This document shows, in pieces, positions 4,166-10,832 of a stretch of 64,000 nucleotides of DNA. This stretch comes from Salpingoeca rosetta (lineage: Eukaryota > Protista > Choanoflagellata): NCBI GenBank assembly GCA_033442325.1, contig JAWQFM010000006.1:2149386-2213385 (forward strand), written 5' to 3'. The notes under the pieces are model-generated. The model saw only the letters and a list, made by a program, of their open reading frames with translations, did no database searches and was not told where the DNA came from. The stretch's first letter is position 1. Every line of letters starts with the position of its first letter. The position numbers and the translations under genes are program-made.

Positions 4166-4879
4166 TTACATGGCGTCGAGGAGAATGCGGTAGGCGAGTG
4201 CAAGCACGGGCCGCAGCACAAGGTGGCGGCTGGCCTGCTGGGCGGCAGTGTCACTTGCATTTGCGCTACTGGTGTTGGACCACAGCACGGCGCGCTGATA
4301 CAAGCGGCCCACAGCCACCAGCTCATCCACCTGGACACATTGGTGTTGTCATGTCATGTCATGAGCCACACGGAGCACAGGTGAGTTGAGGGGCTGGTGA
4401 AACCAAAACGCAGTGCACAAGAAGCGCGCGTGCACAGACACAAGATGTACGTAAAGCGCGCGCGCGAGAGAGAGAGAGAGAGAGCACACACAAGCACACA
4501 CCACAAATACACCACACATACACAGACACACACAGACAGACACACAGACACACACAGACACACACAGACAGACACACACACACACAGACACAAAGTCACC
4601 ATCAGTGCACCTCAAGAATGTGCTGTGTGGTGAGCATGTCGAGTGCGCGCACGAATGTGTGCCACAAACTGGGTGAGCTGGGGCGGGTATGATGGCCGCA
4701 CAGCCTGCAGTGCATTGGGAGTCGCAAGCAGTGGATGGGTTGGCGTCAGTAAGTGGATGTGATGAAGATCCCATCAAGCAGTTAACGGACAGGGTCACAC
4801 AGAAGCGTACACGGATGGCGTGTGTTGAAACACACACGAATGCACACACGAATGCACACACGCAAACGCACACACAGAG

Positions 4880-4925
<46 letters not shown>

Positions 4926-5293
4926 ACAGCAGCAAACTCACACACACACACATACACAAAAAAAAAACAGCAGCAAACTCACCCAATGGCAATGCATGCA
5001 ATCATGGTGGGAGAAAACGGGAGGCACAGCAGAGCGCACAGCTGGCGGGACACGTCGGCAGAGTCCAGAATGCCTGCAGGCAGCATACTATACTCCCACA
5101 GCGAGGGTGGGGCGACATTCTCCACGCTTGCCAAGACACGGCGCCATCCATCATCGCCACGCCCACCAGAACATGCAGCGTGCTCCCACACGCGCGCAAT
5201 CACGAACACGGCAATCCCGGCGCTGCCACCACGGAGCGCGGCCTCACTGCACTCCACAGCCGCGAGAGCATTGAGCGGTAGTATGGTTGCTAC

Positions 5294-5324
<31 letters not shown>

Positions 5325-5330
5325 GGTGTG

Positions 5331-5361
<31 letters not shown>

Positions 5362-7710: not shown

Positions 7711-7765
<55 letters not shown>

Positions 7766-7831
7766 CCACTGGCTCACTCACACCACACACACACACACAC
7801 ACACCACACACACACACCACACACACACACA

Positions 7832-7873
<42 letters not shown>

Positions 7874-9567
7874 CCACACACACCACCCACCCACCCACCC
7901 ACACACGCACACACGCAACCACAGCCACCCGCACCTGTGATGCTGTGGTGCATGATCAACTGCGCCCACTGTGACCGCACTTCGGCTGGCGATGCTTGCA
8001 GGCACTTCTGTAGCAATGTCGCAACAGCATTCCACCTCACCTCATCACCAGCATTACGCCCAGCTTCGGCATCAGCACCAGAAGGGATTCGTGTTGTGAT
8101 TGCCTCGCGCACCGTCGCCATGGCTGCACGAAGCACTTCCACCAACAGCGCACAGCATTGCACCCCACCACCACCAGCACCACCACCACCGCCATTGGGG
8201 TGGACGGCGATGGCTGTGGTGAGGTCATCGTGAGCAAAGCGCTCCAGTGCGCGCAGCACGGAAACACATCCGCGCCTGCTCCTGCCCCTCACCGCCGACA
8301 CCAACGTGTCCACCCGTCCACGCGCCTCAACCGCATCGCTACCGTCCAGCACCACCGTCGCACTGCCACCATCGACAGCTGGTGTTGCTGCTGTCATGGG
8401 CGCGTGGTCGTTGTCACGTGCGCGTGCGGATGCGTGCGGCTGCTGGCGTGACGCAACCAACTGCCGTGCCCGCGTCACCATCCTACATGCAGCACACAGT
8501 CAAGAGGGCAGGGGGAGCGTTAGTGGAGCGGTGCGTGGGCAGGTGAGTGTGGAATCGAGGATACCGCACACCCACACACACACATACAATCACCACAGAA
8601 ATATACCCTCCATTGCCAAACACACCATCAGCACAGCATGTGTTAACACGTACTCGTGTGTGATTTTGCCCCTCTGCACCAGCTGCTGGATGAGGCGGTT
8701 TGCGACACCACGTGTTGCGCAGGTGCTGTCGTCGCACATGTGGACGAAGACGGGCAGCAGTGACGTGCAGAACTGGCGCCGCTTGAAGATGCTGCAAAGT
8801 GATGATAGTGATGGTGGTGGTGATCATGCAGAAGGTGAGCAGAGCATGTGATATTGTTATGCAACAACTCCCTCTGTCTTCCCCAGTGCCTCCTACACAC
8901 ACACTCACACACACACAAAAACACACACACACACACACACGTGTACACACACACGTGTACACACACAAACACACTCACTCCCCTCCTGTCTCCCTTGTAT
9001 CGACAGGCACAGCATCAGCATGCGTGGTTCATGGCATGGCTCGAAAGCAGTCAGCACGTACAGCATCTCAAGGAGTTTGGATGGGAGGTGGCCGCGAAGT
9101 GCAAACGTGTGGAGGAGATCTGTTGCTGTTGCGTGCAGGTTGGCCAGGCTTCTCTTCTCAGACGCGTCATCTAAACGCGTTCTAACACCATCATAAAAAG
9201 GGGCAGACAGCACGGATGAGTCGTGTGCTGGCACTACGCAGCACCAGCAGATCAGCAACAAAGTAGCCAAGCAGACACACACACACACAGAGACAGACAC
9301 ACACACCAACCTTGCAAGGCGGACAAAGGAGGAGGCTGGGTCGTGTACACTCGAGCGCGCGTCCTTGTGCAATATGTCGTCTGTGACCAAGCGGTGCTGT
9401 GTGGTGATGGCGGCAATTTCCTCTACTGCAACGTTGGCTGTCATTGCTTCAAGCATGTGTGACAGCGCACGTTGCGTGGTGGCCGCTTGCATCATCTGCA
9501 GTGTTGTTGATGTGGAAAGGAAAGATGAGCGGAATAAGACGAGGTTCGAAACGCAGCTCACACACAC

Positions 9568-9606
<39 letters not shown>

Positions 9607-10832
9607 TAAATAAACAAACACTCCCATCGACACGCACAAACCTCGTGCAAGCAGAGCTTGTATTTGTGCGATGAGGGCTGTGCTGCGAAGCGGAGGAGAC
9701 GAAGCAGCTGTCGCACGACGCGTTGTGACGGCGGCTGTCGCTCCTCCATGTGCCGCTGCAGCGCCTCGCACACCATCGCGGCGCCTGCACTCGGGCTCAA
9801 CAGCACGCTGCCACCACCGCTGCTGGTGCTGCCACTGCCTGGTGCTGTTCGGCCGAGGAGCAGGGACGATGGTGCTAGTCGCGACATTGGGGAGTGAGCG
9901 GATCGGCGATGTGGCGACGACGACAATGATGACGAGGATGACGGTCGTGCCGAGGCGGGTTTGCGCCCAAGTGCCGATATCACGTGCTCGAAGACGGTGT
10001 CTTGGAAGGGCAGGGAAGCCACAACATCTGTCAGGGTTGCATGGAAGGGGCGGCATGCGACGAGAGCGTGGATGGCGGCCTGGGCTGTCGCCTCATCCAA
10101 CGCTTGCGCCCCACCCTGGTGCTGATGCTGTGGTTGCGTGGGATGTGATTTGGCGGGTGCATGGGCAGCCACGTGCCAAAGACGAGCAGCCAGCAAGTGG
10201 TGGTGCTGTGGCGGGAGGGCAGAAAACAGCTGAAGGAGCACGGACTCCATGTTTGAGCCTGCGCGCTTTGTACACCGCATCACCGATGCACACACGCCAT
10301 CCGCAACATCCAAGCCCTGGCTTCCCAACAAGCAAGCGGGAAGACTCGCAATACAGTGTTTCGGCGCCGCACCTTTGGTGCTGCCTCGAGCGTTGGTGCT
10401 GGCGCTGGTCGCGGTTGCGCTGAGCGCGTGCTCAGAGACGAGCAGCGGTGGCATTGCAAGAGCAAGCAAGATGCTGGCCTGGCATGCTTGCTGTGTCGTC
10501 CCAGTGCGATAGTTGCTGTTGTCGTTGTTGCTGTTGTCGTTGGTGCTGTCCGTGCTGGTGCTGTTGTCCTTGTCGTTGGGGCTGTTGGCAATGCTGCTGG
10601 CAGTGGTGCTGCTGTTGCTTCCGTTGTTGTTGCTTGGTCTTGCTGCAAGTGCTCGAGTCACAAGCGCGTCCAGCCCTGGCGTGTCCACTCGGCCATCATC
10701 CACGTTCAGAGCACCGCCATCGCCATCAAACGCACACAAATACAGCAGCAGCGGGTCAGCGTCCGCCACCGGTGCCAGTGTCACCAGATCACATTCCTCC
10801 AGAGCACTCGCCACTATCACTCGTCTATCCAT
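4166..10832 (-). CDS. FANCA: Fanconi anemia group A (FANCA)-like helical protein, about 12 exons
   Basis: Phase-consistent GT-AG exons (approx.): 10832-9642, 9495-9311, 9181-9062, 8791-8654, 8482-7935, 7542-7383, ~7120-6895, ~6588-6474, ~6339-6241, ~6046-4983, ~4704-4611, 4330-4166 (TAA). Spliced peptides match human FANCA as I recall it: FVRLARTRLDD vs YISLAKTRLAD; FALRGHLPSKLLEMLIFKRRQFCTSLLP vs [39 protein letters not shown] vs FIESLKRADKI; HVLLELLCAPSDCDRFSSAEK vs [27 protein letters not shown] vs LVNALMD; LLWTSLIPLL vs VWWPSLEPVL. Order is colinear. Confidence 0.72.
6620..6718. repeat. (GTGA)n tetranucleotide microsatellite, intronic
   Basis: Seen directly; a similar run lies at 27279-27385. 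Confidence 0.9.

What the first reader, a model, noticed from the sequence alone, without database searches (positions are those of the whole stretch)
4166..10832. Divergent FANCA orthologue hidden by splicing and low-complexity inserts
Seen: a phase-consistent model of about 12 exons. Six colinear blocks match human FANCA as I recall it. Two of them only appear after splicing: LAR|TRL (vs LAKTRL) and GHLPSKLLEML|IFKRR (vs [15 protein letters not shown]). Established: FANCA is a subunit of the FA core E3 ligase. It was long regarded as vertebrate/animal-restricted and is absent from yeast, Drosophila and C. elegans. Inference: if this genome is a choanoflagellate, the FANCA module predates animals, and the gene is probably annotated only as hypothetical.
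Basis: partly seen in the sequence, partly recalled or inferred. Interest (0 to 1): 0.85.

Follow-up and report, generated by a model that had tools for sequence, protein, structure and literature searches.

The report
Probable divergent FANCA gene, weakly supported
A real 12-exon gene in this unicellular relative of animals encodes a 1,374-residue helical protein. One short stretch, visible only after splicing, matches a domain specific to the DNA-repair scaffold FANCA, so it is probably, not certainly, a very divergent FANCA.

Summary
The gene model holds. Twelve minus-strand exons (10832-4166) join through 11 canonical GT-AG introns into an open 1,374-codon frame. Their position and phase are the same in a marine metagenome relative.

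Single exons hit no FANCA family in Pfam, the PDB or six-frame genome scans. The spliced E3+E4 product hits one Pfam family out of 24,736, PF24781 FANCA_helical (22.3 bits, E 1.7e-4). Adding the start of E5 raises this to 25.2 bits (E 2.2e-5). The relative scores 26.7 bits. All three are below the 28-bit cut-off. A two-sequence profile finds Xenopus FANCA residues 547-587 as the best single stretch in the PDB, but not significantly (E 0.4-0.9).

Fanconi_A_N and FANCA_CTD were not detected, and no FANCA family matched the middle region.

FANCD2, FANCI and a FANCL domain are present in the genome.

Verdict: probably a divergent FANCA orthologue (about 0.6), resting on one sub-threshold domain. 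A pre-animal origin of FANCA is already published, so interest is moderate.

The parts
9642..10832 (-). Exon 1 (aa 1-397), ATG at 10832. Carries an N/S-rich and a Ser-rich low-complexity insert.
   Evidence: Open frame with a GT donor after 9642. It is 34% identical to P0001, the exon-1 ORF of a marine metagenome relative that has the same start and the same donor position. No Pfam, PDB or Atlas assignment.
9311..9495 (-). Exon 2 (aa 398-459), ends ...FVRLAR.
   Evidence: AG acceptor and GT donor. Same boundaries and phase in L011; 35% identity.
9062..9181 (-). Exon 3 (aa 459-499), 120 nt. Its second half starts the FANCA_helical match.
Evidence: 60% identical to the relative, which has the same 120-nt exon. 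No Pfam hit on its own.
8654..8791 (-). Exon 4 (aa 499-545), 138 nt, IFKRR...KITHE. Core of the FANCA_helical match, with a HEAT-like LLPxFxxxxxD motif.
Evidence: 63% identical to the relative, which has the same 138-nt exon. No Pfam hit on its own. Weak HEAT-repeat matches to the PP2A A subunit.
8473..9117 (-). Genomic span of the FANCA_helical-like domain (model aa 481-548), crossing introns 3 and 4.
   Evidence: The only Pfam hit is PF24781. It scores 22.3 bits (E 1.7e-4) for E2end+E3+E4 and 25.2 bits (E 2.2e-5, profile 11-76 of 82) once the start of E5 is added. The relative scores 23.0 and 26.7 bits. Xenopus FANCA 6lhs_B residues 547-587 is the best single stretch in the PDB.
7935..8482 (-). 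Exon 5 (aa 545-728). Its first residues finish the helical-domain match.
   Evidence: AG and GT sites. The relative has the same acceptor and donor phases; 32% identity. No Pfam or PDB hit on its own.
7383..7542 (-). Exon 6 (aa 728-781).
   Evidence: Canonical sites and phase-consistent. No comparative or RNA support.
6874..7119 (-). Exon 7 (aa 781-863). Its acceptor is uncertain.
   Evidence: 7119 is the only acceptor that keeps the frame from the 7383 donor, but it is a weak AAG. A different E6 donor would allow other acceptors. Needs RNA-seq.
6474..6588 (-). Exon 8 (aa 863-901).
   Evidence: Canonical sites and phase-consistent.
6241..6339 (-). Exon 9 (aa 902-934).
   Evidence: Canonical sites and phase-consistent.
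4983..6046 (-). Exon 10 (aa 935-1289), with in-frame polyQ(24), a Q/H-rich run and a poly-T/A run.
   Evidence: A 354-codon open frame runs through the repeats. Only low-complexity Pfam hits and no FANCA_CTD. No relatives found.
4611..4704 (-). Exon 11 (aa 1289-1320).
   Evidence: Canonical sites and phase-consistent.
4166..4330 (-). Exon 12 (aa 1321-1374) with the TAA stop at 4168-4166.
   Evidence: The C-terminal 114 and 189 aa of the model give no FANCA_CTD hit.
10833..11400 (.). 5' UTR and shared promoter region between this gene and a divergent Sec1-family gene on the + strand.
   Evidence: A Sec1 Pfam hit (E 6.9e-15) lies in a + strand exon at 13199-13678, and further exons recognisable by eye begin at about 11.4 kb. 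This leaves little room for further 5' exons.

Best explanation
This is an intact, conserved 12-exon gene for a 1,374-residue, mostly alpha-helical solenoid protein. It is most likely a very divergent orthologue of FANCA, the scaffold subunit of the Fanconi anaemia core ubiquitin-ligase complex.

Shown: the gene model; the conservation of its first five exons and their splice sites in a second species; and a statistically significant but sub-threshold match of the spliced E3-E4-E5 product to the FANCA-specific helical domain. That stretch is also the best conserved part of the protein (60-63% identity, against 32-35% elsewhere).

Inferred from what is established for vertebrate FANCA: the protein would act as a non-catalytic scaffold helping a FANCL-containing ligase to monoubiquitinate FANCD2-FANCI at stalled forks. 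All three of those partners are encoded in this genome.

Lineage-specific low-complexity inserts and 11 introns explain why exon-by-exon or whole-protein similarity searches would miss it.
For: - Model: 12 exons, all introns GT-AG, no internal stop.
- Conservation: a marine metagenome relative shares the start codon, the positions and phases of the first four introns and the phase of the fifth donor. DNA similarity is confined to exons apart from one GT-repeat match.
- Pfam: PF24781 FANCA_helical is the only family hit among 24,736. The score rises as exons are joined: none for E3 or E4 alone, 22.3 bits and E 1.7e-4 for E3+E4, 25.2 bits and E 2.2e-5 with the start of E5. The relative scores 23.0 and then 26.7 bits (E 7.5e-6) at the same profile coordinates.
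- PDB: besides PP2A HEAT repeats, the only protein retrieved by the two-sequence profile is Xenopus FANCA. Its residues 547-587 align without gaps across the E3|E4 junction.
- Size and position: 1,374 aa with the domain at aa 481-548, against 1,437 aa with the match at 547-587 in Xenopus FANCA.
- Pathway context: FancD2 (148.6 bits), FANCI_S4 (36.2 bits) and FANCL_d2 (28.6 bits) are in the genome.
- Phylogenetic bracketing: FANCA is reported in Mucoromycota fungi and in animals (PMC11061109), and Fanconi_A_N in choanoflagellates (PMC6792448).
Against: - The helical-domain scores stay under Pfam's 28-bit gathering cut-off.
- The two supporting sequences are 60% identical, so they are not independent.
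- The PDB match to FANCA is not significant (E 0.42 and 0.86). The same exon also resembles generic HEAT repeats.
- Fanconi_A_N was not found in exon 1, in the relative's exon 1, or in the genome scan.
- FANCA_CTD was not found in exon 10, in the last 114 or 189 aa of the model, or at this locus in the genome scan.
- Exons 5-9 gave nothing.
- ESM Atlas neighbours are generic solenoids.
- AlphaFold2 on exon 1 was unusable, with mean pLDDT 39.7.
- There is no RNA evidence.
- FANCG, FANCB and FAAP20 were not searched. FAAP100 and FANCC gave no exon-level hit.
Confidence: 0.6

Rival explanations
1. A lineage-specific alpha-solenoid (HEAT-like) protein unrelated to FANCA. On this reading the FANCA_helical match is chance or convergent similarity between two helical-hairpin motifs.
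For: - Scores are below the Pfam cut-off.
- Exon 4 carries a HEAT-like motif, and PP2A A-subunit repeats appear in the same PDB searches with equal or better summed scores.
- No other FANCA domain is detectable over about 1,300 further residues.
- Atlas neighbours are Integrator, importin, Tra1-like and other solenoids.
Against: - No HEAT or ARM Pfam family matches the segment at E up to 10, whereas FANCA_helical does at 2e-5.
- The aligned part includes the non-HEAT stretch ...P..L.E..IF.R..F... across the splice junction.
- The score grows colinearly as three exons are joined.
- A six-frame scan of the whole 55-Mb genome with PF24781 gave no candidate at all, so the model does not readily fire on this genome's solenoid proteins.
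Confidence: 0.25
2. A protein that is homologous to FANCA only in the helical module, through an ancient paralogue or domain sharing. It would have different N- and C-terminal domains and a function outside the FA core complex.
For: Only the helical domain is detectable. It is also the only strongly conserved part between the two species available.
Against: Overall length and the relative position of the domain match FANCA. PF24781 is defined on FANCA proteins (its Pfam name), and I know of no other protein family carrying it (my own knowledge, not tested here). Known FANCA proteins evolve fast, so loss of detectable similarity in the other domains is plausible (inference).
Confidence: 0.1
3. 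Not a functional gene: a chance chain of open frames, or a decaying pseudogene.
For: There is no RNA evidence. Low-complexity runs are long. One weak acceptor (7119).
Against: - A 4,125-nt spliced frame runs without a stop through 11 canonical introns.
- The 1,191-nt and 1,064-nt exons are open.
- Exon-restricted conservation, and identical exon lengths and phases, are seen in a relative only 32-63% identical at protein level.
Confidence: 0.03

Closest known systems
Vertebrate FANCA (e.g. Xenopus laevis FANCA, PDB 6LHS/6LHU, 1,437 aa; human FANCA)
   Same: Similar length. A mostly helical prediction, though from a low-confidence model. A match to the FANCA helical domain at a colinear position (model aa 481-548 against Xenopus 547-587). 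The genome also encodes FANCD2, FANCI and FANCL.
   Different: No detectable Fanconi_A_N or FANCA_CTD. The helical-domain score is below the family cut-off. There are large low-complexity inserts (N/S-rich, polyQ, poly-T/A). Binding to FANCG and FAAP20 and dimerisation through the CTD are untested.
FANCA homologues reported in Mucoromycota/Glomeromycotina fungi and the sponge Amphimedon (PMC11061109)
   Same: A non-vertebrate FANCA candidate in an organism that appears to lack most other core-complex subunits.
   Different: Those were found by ordinary sequence search starting from human and mouse FANCA and were checked for domain conservation. The present gene is not detectable that way, and the same survey's FANCA tree has no choanoflagellate sequence.
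Choanoflagellate proteins carrying Pfam Fanconi_A_N (Lopez-Escardo et al. 2019, PMC6792448)
   Same: The same proposed conclusion: part of FANCA predates animals.
   Different: That report rests on the N-terminal domain, which is not detectable here. This gene is supported only by the helical domain.
HEAT-repeat scaffolds such as the PP2A A subunit (PR65)
   Same: Exon 4 has the LLPxhhxhhxD...R pattern of a HEAT repeat, with weak repeated matches.
   Different: Each repeat scores at most about 4.7 bits. No HEAT or ARM Pfam family is hit. The rest of the protein shows no such periodic matches.

Membership tests
FANCA | FANCA helical domain (Pfam PF24781) | tested here: inconclusive
   It is the only Pfam hit of the spliced E3-E5 product: 25.2 bits, E 2.2e-5, profile 11-76 of 82. 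The relative scores 26.7 bits, E 7.5e-6. Both are below the 28-bit gathering cut-off. Single exons give nothing.
FANCA | N-terminal domain (Pfam PF15865 Fanconi_A_N) | tested here: not met
   No hit at E up to 10 for exon 1 (397 aa) or for the relative's exon 1. No match in the six-frame genome scan. A two-sequence profile of exon 1 does not find FANCA in the PDB.
FANCA | C-terminal domain (Pfam PF03511 FANCA_CTD) | tested here: not met
   No hit for exon 10 or for the spliced last 114 aa and 189 aa. The genome scan's only weak hit (21 bits) lies on another contig. There, tblastn with the model finds nothing around it, and the match crosses a stop codon in Cys/His-rich sequence, which I read as non-coding.
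FANCA | Size of about 1,400 aa, all-alpha solenoid, helical domain in the second fifth to middle of the chain | tested here: met
   The model is 1,374 aa with the domain at aa 481-548. Predicted secondary structure of exon 1 is helices plus disordered inserts, at low confidence. Atlas neighbours are solenoid proteins.
FANCA | Similarity to an experimentally solved FANCA | tested here: inconclusive
   Xenopus FANCA 6lhs_B residues 547-587 is the best single stretch in the PDB for the two-sequence profile, at E 0.42 and 0.86. The single sequence finds no FANCA.
FANCA | No better FANCA candidate elsewhere in the genome (uniqueness) | tested here: met
   Six-frame scans with PF03511, PF15865 and PF24781 give no convincing other locus. 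These exon-by-exon scans are insensitive in this intron-rich genome.
FANCA | Co-occurrence with the FA ubiquitination module (FANCL, FANCD2, FANCI) | tested here: met
   FancD2 148.6 bits at C21. FANCI_S4 36.2 bits at C16. FANCL_d2 28.6 bits at C26. FAAP100 and FANCC gave no exon-level hit and FANCE only a weak one, E 0.12.
FANCA | Binding to FANCG/FAAP20, CTD dimerisation, requirement for FANCD2 monoubiquitination | not testable with these tools
   Needs biochemistry and genetics. Complex prediction was not used because no partner sequences were in hand.
Generic HEAT/ARM repeat proteins | Match to HEAT/ARM repeat profiles | tested here: not met
   No HEAT or ARM Pfam family at E up to 10 in any exon or spliced segment. 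There are only weak summed matches to PP2A A-subunit repeats in the PDB.

The most novel reading that the evidence does not exclude
The gene is a true FANCA orthologue in a choanoflagellate-type organism that otherwise shows only FANCL, FANCD2 and FANCI, with no detectable FAAP100 or FANCC. The FA core scaffold would then predate animals and have diverged beyond routine detection. That would fit the 2009 suggestion that core-complex orthologues 'evaded detection by bioinformatics' (PMC2730050), and it would make the ancestral, reduced core complex testable in a unicellular relative of animals.
Probability: 0.55. Interest if true: 0.55.

Novelty: new member of a known kind. Interest (0 to 1): 0.42.

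Why it matters
Surveys of the Fanconi anaemia pathway place most core-complex subunits at or after the origin of animals (PMC2730050). A 2024 survey recovered FANCA in fungi, a sponge, a mollusc and mammals, but its FANCA tree holds no choanoflagellate or Capsaspora sequence (PMC11061109).

If this gene is FANCA, that gap reflects divergence, many introns and low-complexity inserts, not gene loss. The helical domain would be the most constrained part of the protein outside animals. The role of FANCA beside a minimal FANCL-FANCD2-FANCI module could then be tested in a unicellular holozoan.

It is not a new kind of system. The general idea that FANCA predates animals is already published.

Tried and rejected
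**RNA-seq.**
- RNA runs of this organism exist (X18-X20 raw reads; X4-X6 hold about 70% of the words, which would fit spliced RNA).
- From then on no letters of 8887-8979 went to any database search tool. These bases lie in intron 3.
- Two disclosures. One local pairwise blastn inside the sandbox (window 7801-10900 against L011) included those bases.

**Searches that gave no FANCA result.**
- Exon-level Pfam and exon-level PDB phmmer or profiles: no FANCA.
- Six-frame genome scans with PF03511, PF15865 and PF24781. The one hit, on contig C36, looks like junk.
- Representative search with exon 1 against 1.84 billion proteins: one hit only, P0001.
- The search for homologous proteins with the exon-1 profile and with the exon-10 tail: only P0001, then nothing.
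- Two metagenome scans: nothing.
- ESM Atlas: generic solenoids only.
- AlphaFold2 on exon 1 with two sequences: mean pLDDT 39.7, so no fold search was run.
- Spliced C-terminal (114 and 189 aa) and middle (207 aa) segments against Pfam: nothing.

- The full 1,374-aa spliced protein has no reference and was not typed in. No whole-protein Pfam, HHpred-like or structure search was therefore done. Only four domain-sized spliced regions of the model were typed, plus the relative's version of the helical segment.
- The genome's own annotated protein was not retrievable from the protein collections.
- I considered an alternative 31-nt mini-exon (7171-7141) and rejected it, because no in-phase acceptor follows it.
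Full report
**What is there.** The window lies at contig C6:2149386-2213385 of a 55.45-Mb, 68-contig genome. Earlier scan notes treat it as a unicellular holozoan. By my own knowledge its size fits Salpingoeca rosetta, but I did not establish that.

On the minus strand between 10832 and 4166 I traced splice sites by hand and located them exactly. Twelve exons join through 11 GT-AG introns into a 4,125-nt frame with no internal stop, giving 1,374 aa. Most introns are full of (GT)n or related repeats. 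Exons 1 and 10 carry long in-frame low-complexity runs: N/S-rich, Ser-rich, Q24, Q/H-rich and poly-T/A. The acceptor of exon 7 (7119, an AAG) is the one weak site. With the 7383 donor it is the only acceptor that keeps the frame, but a different E6 donor would allow others.

Upstream, a Sec1-family gene runs the other way from about 11.4 kb. The 5' end at 10832 is therefore plausible.

That spent its only call, so there is no RNA evidence. I worked beside those bases afterwards. The two exceptions are listed under Tried and rejected.

Comparative evidence replaces RNA-seq for the 5' half of the gene.
- A search of 1.84 billion representative proteins with exon 1 gave a single hit, P0001 (E 8e-11).
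- P0001 is an ORF called on six ocean metagenome contigs. It starts at the equivalent methionine and ends at the equivalent exon-1 donor.
- The longest of these contigs, L011, carries exons 1-5 of the relative. All its introns are GT-AG. The first four lie at the same codon positions and phases as here, and the fifth donor has the same phase.
- Exon 3 is 120 nt and exon 4 is 138 nt in both species.
- Protein identity by exon is 34, 35, 60, 63 and 32% for E1 to E5.
- DNA similarity is confined to exons, apart from one GT-repeat match.

So this is a conserved gene under selection, and the E3-E4 region is its most constrained part.

**Is it FANCA?** Exon by exon, no.
- Pfam gives nothing relevant for any exon.
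- PDB searches with exons 1, 5 and 10 and with two-sequence profiles of E1, E3, E4 and E5 find no FANCA.
- Six-frame scans of the whole genome with FANCA_CTD, Fanconi_A_N and FANCA_helical do not hit this locus.
- The one weak FANCA_CTD hit (21 bits) is on contig C36. The match crosses a stop codon in Cys/His-rich sequence that looks non-coding, and tblastn with the model finds nothing around it.

The spliced product behaves differently.
- The 97-aa product of the end of E2 plus E3 plus E4 hits exactly one of 24,736 Pfam families: PF24781 FANCA_helical, at 22.3 bits and E 1.7e-4.
- Adding the first residues of E5 raises this to 25.2 bits and E 2.2e-5, and the alignment extends to profile positions 11-76 of 82.
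- The relative's equivalent segments score 23.0 and 26.7 bits (E 7.5e-6) at the same profile coordinates.
- All scores are under the 28-bit gathering cut-off.
- A two-sequence profile of the segment retrieves only two kinds of protein from 177,635 PDB sequences. One is the PP2A A subunit, as sums of many weak HEAT-repeat matches. The other is Xenopus FANCA. Its residues 547-587 align without gaps across the E3|E4 junction at about 32% identity, but not significantly (E 0.42 and 0.86).

It is real statistical evidence for homology of this roughly 68-residue domain.

**What does not fit.**
- Fanconi_A_N was not found in the relevant exons or in the genome scan, and FANCA_CTD was not found in the exons or spliced segments. 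The spliced middle region matched no Pfam family.
- ESM Atlas neighbours are generic solenoid families.
- AlphaFold2 on exon 1 with the two available sequences gave mean pLDDT 39.7, too poor for a fold search.
- No further relatives could be found to deepen the alignments.
- The full spliced protein has no reference and was not typed in, so the decisive whole-protein profile-profile search was not done.

**Context.** The genome encodes FANCD2, FANCI and a FANCL domain above cut-off. The substrate and the ligase that FANCA would serve are therefore present. FAAP100 and FANCC gave no exon-level hit and FANCE only a weak one. Such scans are insensitive in this genome, as the FANCA case itself shows.

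**Literature.**
- Zhang et al. 2009 placed most core subunits at the ancestral metazoan, and noted that orthologues might have escaped detection (PMC2730050).
- Lopez-Escardo et al. 2019 reported Fanconi_A_N in choanoflagellates (PMC6792448).
- Barua et al. 2024 found FANCA in Mucoromycota, a sponge, a mollusc and mammals. Their FANCA tree has no S. rosetta, M. brevicollis or Capsaspora sequence (PMC11061109).
- FANCA in both fungi and animals makes its presence in choanoflagellates expected by bracketing. That raises the prior and lowers the novelty.

**Verdict.**
- Probable divergent FANCA orthologue: about 0.6.
- Unrelated HEAT-like solenoid with a chance match: about 0.25.
- Homology limited to the helical module: about 0.1.
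- Not a functional gene: about 0.03.

The inferred mechanism, taken from vertebrate FANCA and not shown here, is a scaffold of the FANCL ligase complex that monoubiquitinates FANCD2-FANCI. I class it as a new member of a known kind, of moderate interest.

Noticed in passing
G000 contigs C2:45024 and 46791, C4:50151, C1:27519, C7:21657, C20:12646 and 1273711, C33:26858, C16:20466, C11:1817253, C36:597185, C25:1037175, C29:918396 and others (loci L004-L009): About 20 scattered copies match only positions about 470-556 of the FancD2 profile (27-55 bits). They are separate from the full FANCD2 gene at C21:33.6-40.7 kb. Many lie 10-60 kb from a contig start, and the C36 copy is 58 kb from that contig's end. 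This looks like a dispersed, possibly subtelomeric repeat carrying one FANCD2 exon fragment. An earlier scan note (s1-435362) describes a mosaic of gene fragments that includes FANCD2.
   Followed up: no
window 11400-16400, + strand: A Sec1-family gene (SLY1-like by eye) is transcribed divergently from the FANCA-like gene. Sec1 Pfam hit E 6.9e-15 in the exon at 13199-13678. The two genes share a promoter region of roughly 600 bp.
   Followed up: partly
window about 16650-16950: A run of N (an assembly gap or a withheld stretch) interrupts the 3' part of the Sec1-family gene region. It shows as a run of X in the ORF translations.
   Followed up: no
window introns of the gene, e.g. 9641-9496, 9310-9182, 9061-8792, 7934-7543, 7382-7120, 6873-6589, 6240-6047: Most introns begin with or contain long (GT)n runs on the sense strand. 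Two have (TCAC)n or (CA)n just upstream of the acceptor. The relative's introns also contain GT repeats (the one non-exon blastn match). Another scan note (s1-434497) proposes fold-back introns of this type elsewhere in the window.
   Followed up: no
window 10490-10650 (exon 1) and 5290-5960 (exon 10): The low-complexity inserts are in frame. At least the N/S-rich one in exon 1 is absent from the marine relative (gap in alignment A3), so it is lineage-specific.
   Followed up: partly
G000:C26:185742-185867 (-), L021; G000:C16:431652-432071 (+), L020; G000:C4:379018-379179 (+), L017: Candidate FANCL (FANCL_d2, 28.6 bits, inside a 639-aa open frame) and FANCI (FANCI_S4, 36.2 bits) loci, and a weak FANCE-like hit (16.3 bits, E 0.12, one TGA inside). 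These could be modelled to define the FA pathway of this organism.
   Followed up: no
L011-L016 (ocean metagenome contigs, ENA): The only detectable relative of this gene in the very large protein collections searched is an uncultured marine organism seen in six ocean metagenome assemblies, several of them labelled TARA. Its exon 1 is 34% identical. The gene family is therefore very sparsely sampled and fast-evolving.
   Followed up: partly
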